Program-made: the position numbers and the translations under genes
Sequence record: NC_091964.1
DNA: 64,000 bases
Reading direction: 5' to 3' (one strand)
Shown here: positions 747-8,281 of the stretch, piece after piece
How the letters are laid out: each line of letters begins with the position of its first letter
How positions within the stretch are numbered: the stretch's first letter is position 1
Notes under the pieces: generated by a model
Databases searched by the model: none
Told to the model about the DNA's origin: nothing
Seen by the model: only the letters and a program-made list of their open reading frames with translations

Positions 747-1808
747 ATGAAACAATCGGTGGAAAGGCTTCTTAAGTCTTTAGCCCCCGGTAGCTGGTTC
801 CAGGGATCTCATTTGTTCGGAAAGAAAACGGCAAATAGCCCTGAACTTGAGGCCGGTGAATTAGTTAACCTCAGTACAGTCATTGGTTCCCCTTCGGAAC
901 TTGACCAGATGCAGGGGATTAAGTTTAAAGATGTTTTCAGTACATGGAAACGCATTGCTTTAAACGGTAGTAACCCGAATGCGTCACCGGAGGAGCTGGA
1001 TACCTGGTCTTTCGACGATGCGACTGATACAGTTCATTGTACAGTTAACTCTGTTTCCACCGTTGGTTTCATTAGCCCGAATGCCTACGATCATTATACG
1101 TTCGAGGTAGACATCTCGAGTTCGCATGGTGACGATGACGGGATCGGGCTATGTCTCGCCTATGTAGGTGAGGGAACCTCCGCTTACTCCCTTTGCCTTT
1201 ATCGACAGGGCGGGTCAAACGTTCAACCTGCGAAAAGTCCAGTTGCACCGTTTGCGCTGGTTTATCAACCTGGTGTCGCTAATCTTCCGGGATACGATCC
1301 TACAACCCGTAAGGTTGGCGGTGTAGTAGGTAACCTCGTCTTCCCTGACGGTACGCCTATCCCAGCAGAGGGCATCAGTACCAACGGACTTAACTTGGGA
1401 TGGGATGCACTGGGAGTAGTACGCGTTAAGGTTGTCCGTGAGGGTAACGTTATTACCTGCCAAACCTCGAAGGGACGCGGTGATTTAACTTACGACCCAG
1501 CGAACAAGTTTGTTATTGATCTCAATTCGTCAGACGACTTACGGAAATTCATCCCTCCGTGTCGTGTAGGCTTTATTGCATATAGCCAGCCGAATGCGAG
1601 TTTCAAATCACTTCTGCAACCGGGAGTGAATGATCAGATCATCGATGCACGTACTAACAGTGTATGGACCTACGACGGCACTAATTGGAACAACGCCCCT
1701 TTCACCGCAGAAAATGCACCAGTAAAAGAAGGGCGTATGTACAAGAATGCAATCACGGGTTCCCTTTATTACGTCGCGGGTGGTTTCAACTTCATCCGGC
1801 TAAATTAG
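747..1808 (+). CDS. Tail-fibre-associated protein with ConA/lectin-like beta-sandwich
   Basis: SD gggagg. The FKDVFSTWKR...NSVSTVGFIS...YTFEV...DDDGIG pattern resembles phiKZ-like tail fibre domains; tail operon context. Confidence 0.55.
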   Translation: MKQSVERLLKSLAPGSWFQGSHLFGKKTANSPELEAGELVNLSTVIGSPSELDQMQGIKFKDVFSTWKRIALNGSNPNASPEELDTWSFDDATDTVHCTVNSVSTVGFISPNAYDHYTFEVDISSSHGDDDGIGLCLAYVGEGTSAYSLCLYRQGGSNVQPAKSPVAPFALVYQPGVANLPGYDPTTRKVGGVVGNLVFPDGTPIPAEGISTNGLNLGWDALGVVRVKVVREGNVITCQTSKGRGDLTYDPANKFVIDLNSSDDLRKFIPPCRVGFIAYSQPNASFKSLLQPGVNDQIIDARTNSVWTYDGTNWNNAPFTAENAPVKEGRMYKNAITGSLYYVAGGFNFIRLN

Positions 1809-1820
1809 TAGGGAATAGAG

Positions 1821-3551
1821 ATGGCTAACAATTTTATTAAGAAGTATCCGTTAGACCGGACAGCCAAAGCGGTATCGAACCGTATCGAAGACGAGCAACA
1901 TAACGTCGGCGTTCAGTTCAACCGTATTGTGGCTCCGAATGCCGGTCCGTATTACGAAGACTCCATGGTGGTCTACGATACGAACGGTAACGAACTGAAG
2001 AAGGGCATTGACTGGGATCCGCTCATGCCGTACACCGAGGCTTCGGTGACGATGGGTATTCCGGTTACTAACATGCTCGTGATTAAGAACAAAGACATTA
2101 CTGAAGTTGTTCTTAAGCGCTACCAGGTTCCGGGCGGTTTGTACCAGACCTATACCGATGCGATCATTGACCTCATCAATTCGTTGATGCAGGACAACCG
2201 TCAAGTCATGTGGGATGACCTGGGCGGCAAGCCAATCCGTTTCCAGCCAACGGCTCACCTTCATCACCTGAAGGATCTGTACGGTTACGAGTATGAAGTT
2301 CTGGCGCTGGAAGAAATTCTTCGCGCTATTCAGAACGGCGACATCGCAGCCCACGATGTAATCTATCAGTACATCGAAAACTTACGTGAATGGACGAAAG
2401 ACCAGATCGCTAAGTTACAGGCTCAGGTAGATGACCTGTACCAGCAAGTCGAGCGTCTTGATAAGCGTATCGATGGTGTTCTGGCTGACCTCGACGTAGT
2501 GCGTAAAAACTTAGCTGCTCACATTGCAGATAAAAATAACCCGCATGCGGTGACAAAAGCACAGACTGGCTTAGGTCTGGTAGAGAACTACGCGATCGCA
2601 ACCACATCGGAAGCACAGGCAGGTGTTGTTACTAATAAGTACATGACTCCTGCCTTGGTTGCTGCGTACGCTGTATCGAAGGTCTTCCCTGTCATTCAGG
2701 CCCACATCGATGACAAGAACAACCCTCATGCTACTACCAAAGCCCAAGTAGGTTTGAGTCTGGTGGAGAACTATCCTCCTGCTACTCAGGCTGAAGGTAT
2801 TGCCGGTGCACTGAGTAACCGTTACATGACGCCGCTTAACGTGGCTCAGTTCATGAACTCGAATGTCTGGCCGACAATCAACAACCATATCAACAACCGC
2901 AGTAACCCACATGGTGTTACTAAAGCGCAAGTTGGCCTTGGTTCCGTTGATAACTTCCCAACTGCATCTGTAGCGGAAGCAAACGGTGGTGGTGCTACCA
3001 ACCGCTTCATGACCCCACAGCTCACAGCCTCTCTGTGGCAGACGTTCTATAATGCTCGTCTGGCTACTGGCGGTAACGCTGCGGTGAACATGAACAAGAT
3101 CGTGACGGTGGCAAGTGACTACGCAACGCGTATCGGCCAGTACCTGTTGTTCCAGACTGCTGCGGGTGAAGTAACTCGTCTGTACTGGGACGGCGGTTCC
3201 CTGAACTGTTCAGGCAACATGAACGTTAACGATGTTTATATTCGTTCGGATATCCGAGTGAAAGACAAAGTACGTTACCTGGACGATACCAATGAGAAAA
3301 TGACTCCTAAACTCCGTAATCTGGCAACTGGCCTTGCGCGTTATGTGTATAATGCTACGCCGGATGAAGAAGAGTTAGGGATCATCGCTCAGGTTGTTCA
3401 AGAGGTCATGCCGGAGCTTACGGTAACCAACCAGGAAAGTGGTATCATCTCCCTTAAACACGCGGGGTTGATTGCTGCCCTGCTTAAAGGCTGGTCCGAG
3501 AACGACGAACGTCTGTCTAAACTCGAACAACACCTCGGTGTTACGGCCTAA
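1821..3551 (+). CDS. Tail fibre (phiKZ gp146-like N-terminus) with C-terminal peptidase S74 intramolecular chaperone
   Basis: Three HxxxxxNPHxxTKAQxGLxxVxN[YF] repeats, a coiled coil, and C-terminal RSDIRVKD...LGIIAQVVQEVMPEL plus a helical coiled-coil tail. Confidence 0.85.
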   Translation: MANNFIKKYPLDRTAKAVSNRIEDEQHNVGVQFNRIVAPNAGPYYEDSMVVYDTNGNELKKGIDWDPLMPYTEASVTMGIPVTNMLVIKNKDITEVVLKRYQVPGGLYQTYTDAIIDLINSLMQDNRQVMWDDLGGKPIRFQPTAHLHHLKDLYGYEYEVLALEEILRAIQNGDIAAHDVIYQYIENLREWTKDQIAKLQAQVDDLYQQVERLDKRIDGVLADLDVVRKNLAAHIADKNNPHAVTKAQTGLGLVENYAIATTSEAQAGVVTNKYMTPALVAAYAVSKVFPVIQAHIDDKNNPHATTKAQVGLSLVENYPPATQAEGIAGALSNRYMTPLNVAQFMNSNVWPTINNHINNRSNPHGVTKAQVGLGSVDNFPTASVAEANGGGATNRFMTPQLTASLWQTFYNARLATGGNAAVNMNKIVTVASDYATRIGQYLLFQTAAGEVTRLYWDGGSLNCSGNMNVNDVYIRSDIRVKDKVRYLDDTNEKMTPKLRNLATGLARYVYNATPDEEELGIIAQVVQEVMPELTVTNQESGIISLKHAGLIAALLKGWSENDERLSKLEQHLGVTA

Positions 3552-3559
3552 CAATTAGA

Positions 3560-3584
3560 AGGGAGGGAAACCTCCCTCTGTTTT
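3560..3584 (+). terminator. Intrinsic terminator/hairpin
   Basis: AGGGAGG-GAAA-CCTCCCT followed by CTGTTTT, after the tail fibre stop. Confidence 0.6.
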
Positions 3585-3595
3585 AGGAGAGAACA

Positions 3596-4708
3596 ATGGA
3601 TCTTTATTACCGTACTCAATTCGGTTGGTCCGGCTGGGCAGATGCCGATGGTTATCAGGCAGGTAATGCTCCTGGTACGTGGGGTGTTACGGGCGGTCCA
3701 GGATCAGAACCAGGAAGTCGTGAGTTCTACGATGATATCCAGCAGTTCTGGGCGATTGACCTTCGGTCAGTAGCTAACCCTTATCCTGACTTTAACCTCG
3801 AGTCTGTCATTGTTGAAACATGGTCGCGTAAGAAGAAACACTCTGAAGAGCATGTCGTCAAAATTGCAGATTACTTCGCAGGTAGTTGGGCGGACAACCC
3901 GGCAAGCCAACCTTATAATCAACTGGTTCCAGCAAGACCACTTGCACCTGAACAGCATGTATGGACATCTAAGAACAGCGTAACTAGCCGTACTACTACC
4001 CATAACCTGTACAGGGCAATTCCGCTTTCAACATTCCAGCGCTCTCCTCTGTTTATTAGTATCAGGGGTATGCCAAACTCCCGTCGATCTTATGGCTATG
4101 CCAAAGTCGTAGGTATCAGAGCATGGCGAGAGCGTCAGATGTTCCCAGGCTGGGCAAGTAACGTAATGCGTCAGGCAGAACGTGCAGTTCCGGGTTGGGG
4201 TTCTCAGCTCTTGGGTGGCGGTCACTGGTTGTCAGAATATCGGGCTGATCGAGAATATCTTGGTATCAGTTGGCCTCCTGTCAATCCAGATAGCTGGACA
4301 CATACAGGCGGTCGCGGCGGCGGTATCCCTGGTACTTTGTGGGGCGGTACTCGTGGTTATGCTACGTTTACTCCTCCGACGAAGCGAAATGTCATTGGCG
4401 TTAAGATAGAGTTTGACGTTAAGAAGAAACAGGGTAGCCATCACGGGCATTATGCAAGATGGCTATGTAGTGCAATTAATAATCCAGACGCTATGGATTA
4501 TAACTACGAGTACTACTATAATGACAACGGCCCTAACCCGCATACCGTAATCTTGAAAGCAGATCGGGTTATTGGTGCAGGTCAACCTATCTATGTTCAG
4601 GGTAGGAAGAACGGTGACCGTGGTGATGGTACTACCTTCAACTACGTCCGTATTACTGACATCTATTACCAAGGCGATCCTGAGCCGGTTTGGTGGCAAC
4701 GTAACTAA
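3596..4708 (+). CDS. Putative tail-fibre tip adhesin / receptor-binding protein
   Basis: SD aggaga. Trp/Gly-rich, two related beta-sandwich halves, an internal gp38-like three-Trp segment, directly after an S74-bearing fibre. Confidence 0.6.
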   Translation: MDLYYRTQFGWSGWADADGYQAGNAPGTWGVTGGPGSEPGSREFYDDIQQFWAIDLRSVANPYPDFNLESVIVETWSRKKKHSEEHVVKIADYFAGSWADNPASQPYNQLVPARPLAPEQHVWTSKNSVTSRTTTHNLYRAIPLSTFQRSPLFISIRGMPNSRRSYGYAKVVGIRAWRERQMFPGWASNVMRQAERAVPGWGSQLLGGGHWLSEYRADREYLGISWPPVNPDSWTHTGGRGGGIPGTLWGGTRGYATFTPPTKRNVIGVKIEFDVKKKQGSHHGHYARWLCSAINNPDAMDYNYEYYYNDNGPNPHTVILKADRVIGAGQPIYVQGRKNGDRGDGTTFNYVRITDIYYQGDPEPVWWQRN

Positions 4709-4720
4709 GCAGCACAAAGC

Positions 4721-4746
4721 CCCTCTCTCCCTTGCGGGAGAGAGGG
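4721..4746. terminator. Hairpin terminator between convergent genes
   Basis: CCCTCTCTCCC-TTGC-GGGAGAGAGGG, 11-bp stem. Confidence 0.75.
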
Positions 4747-4756
4747 AGTTGTGTTG

Positions 4757-5755
4757 TTAGCCTGCGACTGGGGCGGTAGTAATTGCGTTTTCGCCTTGAG
4801 CTCTGTGCTTGTGCTGATTGAGAGAAACAGTCTTCGTTTTGACATCCGCATCCGTGGTAATATCTTTAGTAACAGACAAGCCACCATTAGCCTTGCCTGT
4901 TCCTGTAAAGGTCCAGTCACCTTCGATATTAACATTACCCTTGTGATTCCAGGTAGTAGCAGAAGACTGCATCGTCTTAGCTTCGAGATAGAACTCTTCG
5001 CACTTCAAGAAGAATTGCTTGGTCTGTATTGCGATCTTCTTATCAGACTGCATGAAGATGCTATCCTCAGAACCGATCATGATGTTCTGTTTGTCCAGGA
5101 TAACATACGAACCTTCATTGTTACGCATAGCCCAGCGTTTAGCTTTGGTGTCTAGCGTTAGTTCGTTCCCTTCAGCGTCAGCAAGAGAAATAATACCGTT
5201 ACCGCCGTCCAGCAAGAGACTGTATACAGATATCTCTTTGTTAGCAGCGGCCGTCGAGATGTTAATGATGCGTTGGTGTCCAGACATCTCGATACGATAA
5301 TGTTCCTCGATGATCGCATCTTTTTCGCTTTTATTACTGTTGGGTAAATCAAGTCGACCACTCGCACCCAGGATAATGGTTTCACCGCGACGTTTACCTT
5401 TACCGTCGCCCATCTCCTTCCAGTACACTTGTACCTGGTCACCGTAACGATAAAGTTTAACCTTTTCGCCACGACGTACGTCGGGAGCAGTTAAGCGAAA
5501 ACTATCATCAGGCAGCCAGAGAGCATCGCGCGATGAGTTAGTGTATAAGGTAGCAGTCTTCTCGATGCCTTTAGAGTCTTTAAACTTACTTTCAAGGCGA
5601 AGGTTCTCAGAAACCATATCGCCAGGAGTAAGCGGGTTTTCCTCGACGGGACGATAAAGGATGACACGAGATCCAAGAGGTTTGTTCTCGGATACCGTAC
5701 CCATACCGATATAATGATAGCCACGAGGCGTCGTACTTTCTTCTGCCATTTTCAA
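4757..5755 (-). CDS. Baseplate central spike (gpV/gp5-like; phiKZ gp164-like)
   Basis: N-terminal OB-fold motif TAPDVRRGEKVKLYRYGD, beta-helix-like repeats, C-terminal HKH metal-binding apex (LNQHKHRAQG). Confidence 0.8.
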   Translation of the reverse strand: MKMAEESTTPRGYHYIGMGTVSENKPLGSRVILYRPVEENPLTPGDMVSENLRLESKFKDSKGIEKTATLYTNSSRDALWLPDDSFRLTAPDVRRGEKVKLYRYGDQVQVYWKEMGDGKGKRRGETIILGASGRLDLPNSNKSEKDAIIEEHYRIEMSGHQRIINISTAAANKEISVYSLLLDGGNGIISLADAEGNELTLDTKAKRWAMRNNEGSYVILDKQNIMIGSEDSIFMQSDKKIAIQTKQFFLKCEEFYLEAKTMQSSATTWNHKGNVNIEGDWTFTGTGKANGGLSVTKDITTDADVKTKTVSLNQHKHRAQGENAITTAPVAG

Positions 5756-5818: not shown

Positions 5819-8281
5819 ATGCTTAAGATACAAAACGCAGAAGTCTATAAGAACTCTCGTATACTCTTAGGTGAAGACTGTCATATCCGTTACAATCCCG
5901 TATCACCTTATCAAGTGATTATCGGACAGAATGGTATTGGTAAAACTACATTCCTCACAAACCTGCTCTCATACCCTTCCTTAGGAGGAAAGGCTTTTCA
6001 TAAGGAAGGTTACTCTTCCATCAAATTTGAAAAGGATGGCAAGGAAATCAGTGTTCGTATTAGTCATGATGGCAAATACAGTTTTGTAGTTGATGGTCAA
6101 CCGGAGAACGTAGGCGGGACTCAAGCAGTACAGAAAGACATGTTCAGAGACTTTCTCGGTATCACTCCTGAGATTGAAGCTGTACTTAATCCTAATTTTG
6201 ATTTCTTGGCAATGTCTCCGCAGAAACGCCAGGAATTCCTGGCTAAGTTAACCACCGGTGATTTAGCCTTTGCACTGCAACTTTACAAGAAGCTCGAGCA
6301 ACGCGCTCGTCAACATGACGGCGTTATCAAACGTCTCGAAGCGAACCTCGTAGAACTCAAAACCAAAGCAATCCCAGAAGAAGAGTACGAAGCTTATAAG
6401 CAGCGTTTAGAGGCGTTGAACAACGATATAAGGGATTTGTATATCGAGCTCAATCAAGACGCTCAGAACGCCTCTGGTGGCTCTATAGACCGCTTCCTGC
6501 CACGTATGGAGCAACTGGAGCACAATCTTACCAAAGAGTGGGTGAAATACTACTGTTTTGGTGGGGTAGATGCAACCGATGAGCAAGACGCTGTCGATAA
6601 GTTACATGCCATGCGTAACCAGATTGCTTCTAAGGAATCTGAACTCGAAGGTCTGATGCAGCAGTTTGAAATGTTCAATGAGGTCATGACGTCTTTGTCA
6701 GGTGGCGATGGCGAGCAGGATATTGATGAACGTTTACGTACACTAAACGATCGCTTCAATCGCTTACCACCCGATGAGAACATTCTTGACATCGTCATGG
6801 ATTCGGAGCGTGATTATCGTGATGCTCATAAAGCGCTCTCACGTCTCTATGGCGAGCTCTCAATTAAGTTAAGTGAGATACAAGGTGAATGGTCGGAACA
6901 TCTCTTACAGATCGATCTAGTAGCCCTGCGTGAAGAGCATCAGGACATTGAGCGACGTATCTATAAGCTGGAGCAAGAGATCAGTCGTATCGATGGCGAT
7001 CTTGAGCATAAGCACAGCGGAGAAGTTCGCTGTCCGGATTGCGGCAAGCAGTTTACTCCTGGGTTAGATGAACGTCGCAGGGAGTCAATGATTGCTCGTC
7101 GAGAAACATTGCTCGAGTCTAAGTCACGTGGTGTTGCTATCCTTGCTGAGAAAACTAAACTCGGTAAAGAAGCTCGTACTTGTCAGGATCAGTACAATTA
7201 CATCCGTAACATGTGTAACTTACCGATTCTGTATAATACGTTCTTAGTCGTTGATAACAAAGCATCGTTATTGACGAGTCCGCAGCATTGGTTACGTGTT
7301 TGTTCAATGGCGTTGCAGACTCTGGAAATCAAAGCAGAGAAAGCCGGTATTCTGGATGATATTCATACGCTCGAAAAACAAAAGCGGATGATGGCAGAAT
7401 CCAACATTGAATCGACCCAGACCTTGGCTGATCGATTAGCAATTCTGGACGAGCGTATTTGGCGAGTTAATACCGATATCCAATCTTTACGTGACCGTGC
7501 TAACAACTACGCTGGTCGTCTGGATAAAGTGCGTAAGTTTGAGCGTTGGGCAGAAGCGCAGGAGAGAGAGTACGTTGACATTGGCGAACAGTTATTTGCC
7601 TCTGCTGAATACGAACTCGATCAGATTCGTCGCGAACTGTTAGTGACCTTACAAGCTAGTGCATCGGAACTCGCTACGTTGATTTCTAACTACGAGAAAG
7701 ATCATACTCAGTTGGAGTACCTGACAGGGATGATTGAGTCCGAGCGTGCTCAGATGGAAGCTGTTAAGATGTCTGCTGATGAACTGTCTCCTAAGACAGG
7801 GATGATCGCTGAACAGCTCTACGGTTTCATCGAGTGTTTCTTAGACGACGTAATGGAGATCTGTAATAATATCTGGACTTACAATGTTCAGATTTATCCT
7901 GCTAAAGATAGAAGTGCTGCGTTGACCTACGTGTTCCCGGTTGAGTTCAATAACTCAGACAATGCATCTGATGATATCGCAAAAACATCCGAGGGACAGT
8001 ACAGCTTAATAAACTTTGCTATTCGTATTACGGCATTGCGTTATATGGGCTACGAGAAGTCAATGCTATTTCTGGACGAGCCGGAACGTGCATTTACTCC
8101 AGTGCATAAAGTCAAAATGATGAACTTCATTCGTGACATGGTAGAATCTGGTTTGTTTAGTCAGGTCTTCATTATTAGTCACCATGAATCCGGTTGGGGT
8201 GCATTGCCTTATCCTGACATCATCGACTTTAGCTACGAGTCTAACTTACCAGGCACTAACGAAGTTATTCGATTCAAGTGA
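5819..8281 (+). CDS. sbcC: SbcC/Rad50-like SMC ATPase
   Basis: Walker A GQNGIGKT, long coiled coils, central zinc hook CPDC, signature TSEGQ, Walker B LFLDEPE, H-loop SHH. Confidence 0.88.
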   Translation: MLKIQNAEVYKNSRILLGEDCHIRYNPVSPYQVIIGQNGIGKTTFLTNLLSYPSLGGKAFHKEGYSSIKFEKDGKEISVRISHDGKYSFVVDGQPENVGGTQAVQKDMFRDFLGITPEIEAVLNPNFDFLAMSPQKRQEFLAKLTTGDLAFALQLYKKLEQRARQHDGVIKRLEANLVELKTKAIPEEEYEAYKQRLEALNNDIRDLYIELNQDAQNASGGSIDRFLPRMEQLEHNLTKEWVKYYCFGGVDATDEQDAVDKLHAMRNQIASKESELEGLMQQFEMFNEVMTSLSGGDGEQDIDERLRTLNDRFNRLPPDENILDIVMDSERDYRDAHKALSRLYGELSIKLSEIQGEWSEHLLQIDLVALREEHQDIERRIYKLEQEISRIDGDLEHKHSGEVRCPDCGKQFTPGLDERRRESMIARRETLLESKSRGVAILAEKTKLGKEARTCQDQYNYIRNMCNLPILYNTFLVVDNKASLLTSPQHWLRVCSMALQTLEIKAEKAGILDDIHTLEKQKRMMAESNIESTQTLADRLAILDERIWRVNTDIQSLRDRANNYAGRLDKVRKFERWAEAQEREYVDIGEQLFASAEYELDQIRRELLVTLQASASELATLISNYEKDHTQLEYLTGMIESERAQMEAVKMSADELSPKTGMIAEQLYGFIECFLDDVMEICNNIWTYNVQIYPAKDRSAALTYVFPVEFNNSDNASDDIAKTSEGQYSLINFAIRITALRYMGYEKSMLFLDEPERAFTPVHKVKMMNFIRDMVESGLFSQVFIISHHESGWGALPYPDIIDFSYESNLPGTNEVIRFK

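What the first reader, a model, noticed from the sequence alone, without database searches (positions are those of the whole stretch)
3596..4708. Two-headed adhesin with an internal T2-gp38-like three-Trp attachment module
Seen: the gene follows a fibre with a C-terminal S74 chaperone. Residues 182-220 (nt ~4139-4255) read MFPGWASNVMRQAERAVPGWGSQLLGGGHWLSEYRADRE. On each side is a related beta-rich domain (W..TGG.G..PG, a KKK..H..H-like strand, and a terminal aromatic-x-[KR]-[VI] strand pair). Established: in T2/S16-type phages, S74-processed gp37 is capped by adhesin gp38, whose N-terminal helical tripod (VPGWIG...RWMSQ...CWMSQFAGRSRE in T2, from memory) docks through three Trp. Inference: the docking module here is central and carries two binding heads, a bivalent fibre-tip adhesin I do not know from phiKZ-like phages. 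The in-frame ATG at 4139 could also give a shorter single-headed form.
Basis: partly seen in the sequence, partly recalled or inferred. Interest (0 to 1): 0.75.

Follow-up and report, generated by a model that had tools for sequence, protein, structure and literature searches.

The report
Two-domain jelly-roll protein after phage fibre
This gene of the jumbo Serratia phage PCH45 encodes an uncharacterised protein with two lectin-like beta-sandwich domains joined by a flexible tryptophan-rich helical loop; it is probably an accessory tip protein of the neighbouring tail fibre, but the proposed kinship with the T2/S16 gp38 adhesin rests on a ten-residue motif and on gene order only.

Summary
The window is Serratia phage PCH45. 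The ORF at 3596-4708 is its 61st CDS (QFP93093.1, "hypothetical"). The quoted peptide and the upstream S74 fibre (gp60) are real.

The Trp segment is not an ancestral central hub. It is the C-terminal excursion of a conserved ~220-aa module, and single-domain relatives (SPLA10, Goslar gp87) end right after it. The C-terminal domain is a separate mobile module. In phages whose fibres lack S74 it is encoded on its own, behind a different N-terminus.

AlphaFold predicts two jelly-roll sandwiches with parallel strand order. The Trp segment has low confidence, with a short helix predicted right after each of the first two Trp.

In favour of a gp38-like role:
- The gp60 C-end is 36% identical to gp37 of gp38-bearing T-even phages.
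- The gene order matches g37-g38.
- A 10-column motif matches Gp38_N (hhalign P 3e-4).

Against:
- There is no Pfam, HMM, PDB or Foldseek hit to gp38.
- The Trp residues are only 8-11 of 12 conserved.
- Three-Trp clusters are expected by chance in this Trp-rich protein.
- Three relatives are not fibre-linked.

Verdict: a probable fibre-tip adhesin and a new variant of a known kind. Homology to gp38 is unproven.

The parts
1821..3551 (+). gp60, a 576-aa tail fibre (phrog_2163) with a C-terminal S74 intramolecular chaperone. It is the presumed partner of gp61.
   Evidence: A PCH45 Tn-seq and proteomics preprint names gp60 an essential virion tail fibre. The gene number follows CDS order, anchored by gp33 = PhiKZ_MCP and gp50 = thymidylate kinase.
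3156..3245 (+). gp60 aa 446-475: the last ~30 residues of the presumed mature fibre, homologous to the gp37 tip just before the cleavage site.
   Evidence: BLASTP against the RB16 gp37 C-end gives 36% identity, E 8e-20, starting in this stretch. See also alignment A7.
3246..3548 (+). gp60 aa 476-576: the S74 chaperone domain. Ser476 and Lys481 are invariant in 8 fibres. Release by autoproteolysis is inferred from the family.
   Evidence: Pfam PF13884, E 5e-6, at aa 476-533. Invariant I-R-S-D...K columns in A7. Weak hit to S16 gp37, 6f45_A.
3560..3577 (+). GC-rich hairpin followed by a short T run, between the gp60 stop and the gp61 Shine-Dalgarno. It may be an attenuator.
   Evidence: A hairpin of different sequence lies at the same place in SPLA10 and in L013.
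3596..4708 (+). gp61 (QFP93093.1), 370 aa: the gene of the finding.
3596..4138 (+). N-terminal jelly-roll domain, aa 1-181. With the next two parts it forms the family-defining module.
   Evidence: pLDDT is mostly 75-96. It is shared by SPLA10 gp64, Goslar gp87, P0004, P0006, P0009-P0011, P0013, P0015 and P0016. No close PDB fold relative was found; the best hits are viral jelly rolls and CBM16, with TM <= 0.5.
4139..4246 (+). Trp-rich helical excursion, aa 182-217. W186 and W201 each sit just before a predicted short helix (W211 only marginally). This is the candidate docking element.
   Evidence: pLDDT is 38-56 in both models. Helices are predicted at 187-193 and 202-206; after W211 DSSP marks only three helical residues, in the full-length model alone.
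4247..4261 (+). Return strand, aa 218-222, predicted to pack back on the N-terminal sandwich. Single-domain relatives end here.
   Evidence: Strand 217/218-221 is predicted, and the last block has pLDDT 86. The ends of SPLA10, P0004 and Goslar gp87 fall here.
4262..4669 (+). C-terminal jelly-roll domain, aa 223-358. It is a mobile module that also occurs at the C-end of unrelated small proteins.
   Evidence: pLDDT is 77-89. Homologues P0007, P0008, P0012, P0014, P0017, P0018 and P0022 carry other N-termini. BFVD hits include proteins of Serratia phage Yaphecito and Erwinia phage pEa_SNUABM_47.
4670..4705 (+). C-terminal tail, aa 359-370, with a WW pair. It is present only in the closest relatives.
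   Evidence: Alignments. pLDDT is low at the very end.
4720..4747 (.). Bidirectional terminator-like hairpin between gp61 (+) and the convergent baseplate gene gp62 (-).

Best explanation
gp61 is an accessory tip protein, most likely an adhesin, of the gp60 tail fibre.

Shown:
- It has two predicted jelly-roll (lectin/CBM-like) domains.
- The first domain ends in a flexible ~36-residue excursion. W186 and W201 each immediately precede a predicted short helix (W211 only marginally), and the excursion returns to the domain as a final strand.
- This N-terminal module is the conserved unit of a small family confined to PCH45/SPLA10/Goslar-like jumbo phages.
- The second domain is an exchangeable add-on.
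- In five loci the gene sits directly behind a fibre gene that ends in an S74 chaperone of the same type as in gp37 of gp38-bearing T-even phages.

Inferred:
- gp60 trimerises and its chaperone is cut off at Ser476.
- gp61 docks on the exposed tip. The low-confidence Trp/helix excursion may be the docking element and may fold only on binding.
- The one or two jelly-roll domains bind a surface saccharide of the host. PCH45 is known to need flagella and LPS O-antigen.
- The similarity to Gp38_N may be distant homology or convergence. It is not established.
For: - Identity and family.
- Architecture: single-domain relatives end just after the Trp segment. P0006 and P0011 carry other C-domains. 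P0007, P0008, P0012, P0014, P0017 and P0018 carry the C-domain behind other N-termini.
- Synteny: the gene follows an S74 fibre in PCH45, SPLA10, L004, L012 and L013.
- Converse case: fibres of the same phrog_2163 family without S74 (L006, L037) are followed by a C-domain protein that lacks the N-module.
- Fibre homology: the gp60 C-end matches gp37 of RB16 and many T-even phages, whose next gene is a Gp38_N protein.
- Folds.
- Motif match to Gp38_N: hhalign prob 41%, P 2.8e-4, score 21.1 against a shuffle null of 9.4 +/- 2.5.
- Some true Gp38_N members also lack all three Trp, so Trp loss in SPLA10 is not decisive.
- gp60 is reported as an essential virion fibre.
- The receptors are flagella plus LPS.
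Against: - No significant sequence or fold match to gp38 or Gp38_N was found.
- The motif match covers 10 of 43 profile columns and was examined after the idea had been raised.
- The Trp positions are less conserved than the neighbouring Pro, Gly, Ser and Gln.
- P0010 has none of the three Trp.
- Goslar-type genes, P0010 and P0013 are not next to an S74 fibre, and two of them lie among non-structural genes.
- Neither complex prediction nor virion data for gp61 could be obtained. gp61 is not mentioned in the main text of the proteomics preprint, and its tables are not held.
- No sugar-binding site was tested.
Confidence: 0.45

Rival explanations
1. gp61 is a virion structural protein with jelly-roll domains (a baseplate, fibre-shaft or decoration protein) that does not cap gp60. 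On this view its place after the fibre gene only reflects clustering of tail genes. The Trp segment would be a flexible surface loop or interdomain linker of the N-terminal domain.
For: - Goslar-type homologues sit in another tail module, between a gpS-like fibre with its assembly protein and an 870-aa DUF7941/NCTSP protein, far from the S74 fibre gp25.
- The segment's two ends are anchored in the N-domain.
- Three-Trp clusters occur elsewhere in the protein.
- gp38 membership tests failed.
Against: - Five of eight examined loci place the gene directly after the S74 fibre.
- S74-less fibres have a different partner.
- The Pro/Gly/Ser/Gln pattern is more conserved than expected for a plain linker.
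- The motif match to Gp38_N exceeds the shuffle null.
Confidence: 0.28
2. gp61 is a non-virion assembly factor for the fibre, in the manner of T4 gp38 or Tfa proteins. It would be needed transiently and then discarded.
For: - It occupies the position immediately after the distal fibre gene, as T4 g38 does.
- The hairpin before the gene suggests lower expression.
- gp61 is not named among the virion proteins in the main text of the preprint.
Against: - gp60 carries its own intramolecular chaperone.
- No Caudo_TAP or other chaperone family hit was found.
- Two well-predicted jelly-roll domains, plus an exchangeable C-terminal domain, are the pattern of receptor-binding proteins rather than chaperones.
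Confidence: 0.1
3. The N-module family is not tail-associated at all. It could be, for example, a secreted or cell-surface-acting lectin used during infection. Its adjacency to fibres in the PCH45 clade would then be incidental.
For: P0010 and P0013 lie among nucleotide-metabolism and small early-type genes: DHH phosphoesterase, Macro and thymidylate synthase.
Against: - No signal peptide or enzymatic domain was seen.
- Most loci are in tail modules.
- The C-domain recurs at the ends of fibre-adjacent proteins.
Confidence: 0.07

Closest known systems
T2/S16-type gp38 adhesin (Pfam Gp38_N PF21721 plus GP38; PDB 6F45)
   Same: - It is encoded directly after a distal fibre gene whose product ends in a homologous S74-type chaperone.
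- One chain would have to sit on a trimeric tip.
- It has a short helical element with Trp at helix starts.
- gp61 198-207 aligns with Gp38_N positions 32-41.
- The three conserved apex Trp of S16 gp38 are documented in PMC6851490.
   Different: - There is no significant profile, HMM, PDB-sequence or Foldseek match.
- The element is not N-terminal. It follows a 181-aa domain.
- The Trp spacing is 15 and 10, against 13 and 15 in RB16 gp38.
- The heads are jelly rolls, not a beta-helix with a polyglycine-II sandwich.
RB16-type and Bragavirus-type gp38 (174 and 197 aa; Gp38_N plus other heads)
   Same: They show that the Gp38_N attachment element is combined with unrelated heads, as the gp61 family combines its module with different C-domains.
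   Different: BLASTP of gp61 against RB16 gp38 gives only E 0.6-0.8 over 8-22 residues. The domain order is the opposite.
Goslar gp87 (QBO63880), SPLA10 gp64 (WNT47125) and metagenomic relatives P0004-P0016
   Same: They are true homologues of gp61 aa 1-222 at 24-53% identity. Foldseek TMt is 0.70 for Goslar gp87.
   Different: They are uncharacterised. Most are single-domain. Goslar's copy is not next to its S74 fibre.
Galactose-binding-domain-like / discoidin / CBM jelly rolls (DDR1 4ag4, neuropilin b1b2 4qdr, CBM16 2zew, CBM22 4xup)
   Same: The predicted fold class of both domains matches, and so does the tandem arrangement.
   Different: TM-scores are low (0.2-0.5) and identity is 8-13%. 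No ligand site was identified.
S74 intramolecular-chaperone fibres (endosialidase type; gp37 of gp38-bearing T-even phages)
   Same: gp60 has the invariant Ser/Lys cleavage motif and 31-36% identity to the C-end of RB16 gp37.
   Different: This concerns gp60, not gp61. The shaft of gp60 belongs to phrog_2163 of jumbo phages.

Membership tests
Gp38_N / T2-S16-type gp38 adhesin | Significant match to the Gp38_N profile (PF21721) or to solved S16 gp38 | tested here: not met
   Pfam gives no hit at E<=1. An own HMM of 16 gp38 N-termini gives <=5.9 bits. A PDB search of the segment finds nothing at E<=10, while the control RB16 gp38 finds 6f45_D at 5e-6. hhalign gives only 10 columns, prob 41%.
Gp38_N / T2-S16-type gp38 adhesin | Attachment element at the N-terminus, followed by the head | tested here: not met
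   The segment is at aa 182-217, after a 181-aa domain. In single-domain relatives it is C-terminal.
Gp38_N / T2-S16-type gp38 adhesin | Three helices, each with a conserved apex Trp | tested here: inconclusive
   Helices are predicted at 187-193 and 202-206; after W211 there are only three helical residues, in one model. pLDDT is 38-56. Trp is kept in 9, 8 and 11 of 12 relatives. Some true Gp38_N members also lack the Trp.
Gp38_N / T2-S16-type gp38 adhesin | Encoded directly downstream of a distal fibre gene with a gp37-type C-terminal chaperone | tested here: met
   This holds in 5 of 8 loci of the family (against 47, 53, 83).
Gp38_N / T2-S16-type gp38 adhesin | Beta-helix plus glycine-rich (polyglycine II) receptor-binding head | tested here: not met
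   Both domains are predicted as jelly rolls. No gp38 hit appears in Foldseek against PDB or BFVD. There is no Pfam GP38 hit.
Gp38_N / T2-S16-type gp38 adhesin | One monomer bound to the trimeric fibre tip in the virion | not testable with these tools
   No multimer prediction is available. The virion MS table of the PCH45 preprint is not held.
Galactose-binding-domain-like / CBM jelly roll | Eight-stranded beta-sandwich fold | tested here: met
   AlphaFold2 pLDDT is 75-96 (N) and 77-89 (C). Foldseek prob is 0.97-1.0 to discoidin/CBM tandems but TM is low. The N-domain alone gives E >= 1.5e-3.
Galactose-binding-domain-like / CBM jelly roll | Identifiable sugar- or metal-binding site | not tested
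Tail fibre assembly proteins (Caudo_TAP, T4 gp38 type) | Match to a chaperone family profile | tested here: not met
   No hit in Pfam, PHROGs or NCBIfam.
Unnamed family of Goslar gp87 / SPLA10 gp64 | Homology over aa 1-222, including the invariant F-P-G, P-G, S-Q, G and L columns of the tail | tested here: met
   E-values run from 1e-9 to 1e-109.

The most novel reading that the evidence does not exclude
A jumbo-phage counterpart of the gp38 principle with reversed polarity. On this reading a single chain docks on the S74-processed trimeric gp60 tip through a post-domain three-helix Trp tripod, either distantly related to or convergent with Gp38_N. It presents two different lectin-like heads, which could serve the two known receptors of PCH45 (flagellum and LPS). 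The second head would be a cassette that other phages encode on a separate tip protein.
Probability: 0.2. Interest if true: 0.75.

Novelty: new variant of a known kind. Interest (0 to 1): 0.5.

Why it matters
Receptor-binding proteins of nucleus-forming jumbo phages are largely unassigned. PCH45 is a model phage with known receptors (flagella and LPS), genome-wide essentiality data and virion proteomics. If gp61 caps the essential gp60 fibre, it becomes the prime candidate for the receptor-recognising element. It would also show that capping an S74-processed trimer with a monomeric adhesin is not restricted to T-even phages. The modular pattern would then give a rule for annotating fibre-tip proteins in this clade: the N-module goes with S74 fibres, and the C-domain travels between proteins. 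If it does not cap the fibre, the family is still a new pair of jelly-roll modules in tail gene clusters, but of ordinary interest.

Tried and rejected
Searches without a hit:
- Pfam, PHROGs, NCBIfam and PDB sequence searches of gp61 and of family profiles gave no informative hit. The only PHROG hit (phrog_28186, E 0.026) and the antibody light chain 6wds_L (E 0.32) were treated as chance.
- BLASTP of N half against C half found nothing. The first hhalign gave prob 0.4%.
- Representative-library hits P0019-P0021 are Ig/PKD repeat proteins that match a short Asp/Gly stretch. They were rejected as spurious.
- The Met182 internal start was rejected for lack of conservation and of a ribosome-binding site.

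Tool refusals:
- The SPLA10 protein later came back by itself from the protein search as P0005, and a Goslar-like representative came back as P0015. These were then used in A4 and A6. I state this so that it can be judged.
- Structure prediction was not ready twice.

Not obtainable:
- The supplementary tables of the PCH45 Tn-seq/proteomics preprint are not held.
- The receptor-prediction preprint that includes Goslar says nothing on gp87.
- No multimer prediction is offered, so the docking itself could not be modelled.

Full report
**Identity of the locus**

A tblastn search places the window in Serratia phage PCH45 (MN334766.1), with window position = record position minus 62000. PCH45 is a nucleus-forming jumbo phage. 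The ORF at 3596-4708 is QFP93093.1, annotated 'hypothetical protein'.

Counting CDS in record order makes it the 61st gene. The count is anchored by two checks:
- The 33rd CDS is a PhiKZ-type major capsid protein.
- The 50th CDS is a thymidylate kinase, as named in a PCH45 Tn-seq/proteomics preprint.

In that preprint gp60 is an essential tail fibre detected in virions. gp61 is not mentioned in the main text, and the tables are not held.

**The observation**

The ORF, the quoted residues 182-220, the three Trp (186, 201, 211) and the ATG at 4139 are all there. The upstream gene (1821-3551) is a phrog_2163 fibre with Peptidase_S74 at aa 476-533.

The Trp cluster by itself means little. The protein has 17 Trp, three Trp within 26 residues occur six times along the chain, and almost every shuffle of the sequence gives such a cluster.

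**The family and its architecture**

Two protein searches and one exhaustive profile search found only about 18 relatives, all from jumbo-phage-like contigs. They resolve gp61 into two modules.

Module 1 is aa 1-222, made of a domain plus the Trp segment plus a short final strand.
- It occurs alone in SPLA10 gp64, P0004, P0013, P0016 and Goslar gp87/P0015. These proteins end one to three residues after the position of gp61 L222.
- It occurs with the gp61-type C-domain in P0001-P0003, P0009 and P0010.
- It occurs with unrelated C-domains in P0006 and P0011.

Module 2 is aa 223-358.
- It also occurs at the C-end of small proteins with a different N-terminus of ~50-60 aa (P0007, P0008, P0012, P0014, P0017), and of P0018 and P0022.

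So the Trp segment is not an ancestral central hub. It is the tail of module 1, and gp61 is module 1 with a mobile second domain fused on.

Within the segment, the best-kept columns are Phe183, Pro184, Pro199, Gly200, Gly209 and Leu212 (12/12) and Ser203 and Gln204 (11/12). The Trp are kept in 9, 8 and 11 of 12. P0010 has none of them, and SPLA10 has only the third.

**Predicted structure**

AlphaFold2 on a 20-sequence alignment gives mean pLDDT 79.6.
- Both domains are beta-sandwiches of good confidence.
- Their strands follow the same order of lengths.
- The KKK-containing hairpin and the long final strand pair fall at equivalent places.

Residues 182-217 have pLDDT 38-56 in both the full-length and the module-1 model. 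Short helices are predicted at 187-193 and 202-206, directly after W186 and W201. After W211 only three residues are marked helical, and only in the full-length model. Residues 218-221 return as a strand to the first sandwich.

Foldseek results:
- The full model matches tandem galactose-binding-like/discoidin/CBM proteins at prob 0.97-1.0 but TM about 0.2.
- In BFVD it matches itself, Goslar gp87 and stand-alone C-domain proteins of other jumbo phages.
- Module 1 alone has no hit at E<=1e-3. The nearest are viral jelly rolls and CBM16.
- No gp38 structure appears in any list.

At sequence level the two domains are not demonstrably related. BLASTP finds nothing, and hhalign gives P 0.003, prob 10% with the larger profiles, although the alignment is colinear.

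**Test of the gp38 idea**

The established part holds. In S16 the N-terminal three-helix bundle of gp38 docks on trimeric gp37 through three conserved apex Trp (PMC6851490).

The last 143 aa of gp60 find 821 phage records, mostly gp37 of T-even phages.
- Against RB16 gp37 the identity is 36% (E 8e-20). The match begins about 30 residues before the invariant I-R-S-D...K motif.
- In RB16 and in a Bragavirus the next gene is a gp38 with Pfam Gp38_N (E 6e-22 and 1e-15).

So the fibre end and the gene order are the same as in gp38-bearing phages.

For gp61 itself the result is weaker.
- Pfam gives no Gp38_N hit.
- An HMM built from 16 gp38 N-termini fetched from viral contigs gives at most 5.9 bits.
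- A PDB search with the segment finds nothing, whereas the control finds S16 gp38.
- Profile-profile comparison aligns only gp61 198-207 with Gp38_N positions 32-41: prob 41%, P 2.8e-4, score 21.1 against 9.4 +/- 2.5 in column shuffles, reached by 1 of 600.

This is more than composition explains. But it is one of three helices, and the comparison was made after the idea had been raised. Several genuine Gp38_N sequences lack all three Trp, so Trp loss in SPLA10 neither supports nor refutes the idea.

**Genomic context as a test**

- The module-1 gene follows an S74 fibre directly in PCH45, SPLA10, L004, L012 and L013.
- In L006 and L037 the fibre of the same PHROG lacks the S74 domain. There the next gene encodes the C-domain behind another N-terminus, without module 1.
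- Against a strict link, Goslar-type genes lie in another tail module far from the S74 fibre gp25.
- P0010 and P0013 lie among non-structural genes.

**Expression signals**

A GC-rich hairpin followed by a T run lies between gp60 and the Shine-Dalgarno of gp61. Hairpins of different sequence lie at the same place in SPLA10 and L013. A bidirectional terminator follows gp61. Met182 is Ala or Gly in relatives and lacks a good ribosome-binding site, so a short form is unsupported.

**Conclusion**

The most likely reading (about 0.45) is a fibre-associated tip protein with one conserved and one exchangeable lectin-like domain. It would dock on the processed gp60 end, possibly through the flexible Trp/helix excursion. 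PCH45 needs flagella and LPS O-antigen (PMC11797060), which would suit saccharide-binding heads.

Membership of the gp38 family is not established, and two of its defining features were tested and not met. 'Works like gp38' remains open and testable by descriptive means: the existing virion proteomics table, complex prediction, and structures of the fibre end.

Noticed in passing
window 3560-3577; L002 ~5975-5990; L013 ~581-597: A GC-rich hairpin lies between the S74 fibre gene and the following gene, just 5' of the Shine-Dalgarno. It is present in three phages with different stem sequences; two have a TTCG loop. It may be an attenuator or an mRNA-processing signal.
   Followed up: partly
L006 8001-8552; L037 1698-2228 (P0007, P0012; also P0008, P0014, P0017): Stand-alone homologues of the gp61 C-domain begin with two or three short Gly-Gly-x-Trp-type strand repeats. 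They follow phrog_2163 fibres that lack the S74 domain. This may be a second, different way of attaching the same head.
   Followed up: partly
L006 5079-6815 and 6828-7991: Two adjacent S74-less fibre proteins (578 and 387 aa) end in a similar short aromatic Gly-Tyr...Gly-His...Trp C-terminal motif.
   Followed up: no
window 747-1808 (gp59) and 1-730 (C-end of gp58): gp59 (353 aa; phrog_21285/36886/33406) has no counterpart at the syntenic place in SPLA10, where the 906-aa protein is followed directly by the S74 fibre. The preprint reports gp58 as a virion fibre that is not essential.
   Followed up: no
L003 6596-9208 (Goslar gp86) and L039-L043: The gene after Goslar gp87 encodes an 870-aa protein with DUF7941 plus NCTSP_N and NCTSP TIM-barrel domains. 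DUF7941 proteins also occur near the fibre genes in L004 and L006.
   Followed up: no
window 5819-8281: An 820-aa SbcC/SMC-like ATPase gene sits between the baseplate gene gp62 (4757-5755, minus strand) and further virion genes. The arrangement is conserved in SPLA10, L006 and L013.
   Followed up: no
L010/L011 6001-7035 (P0010): This two-domain relative has lost all three Trp (Lys, Ala, Arg in their place). It lies between small unknown genes and a DHH phosphoesterase, not in a tail module.
   Followed up: partly
window 4670-4705 (gp61 aa 359-370): A short C-terminal tail with a Trp-Trp pair is present only in PCH45 and its two closest relatives. It is predicted as a small helix of low confidence.
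   Followed up: no
window 2400-3100 (gp60 aa ~220-410): There are three tandem copies of a ~60-aa fibre repeat (Asn-Pro-His ... Thr-Lys-Ala-Gln ... Arg-[Tyr/Phe]-Met-Thr-Pro). The Goslar-type fibre in L004 has five.
   Followed up: no
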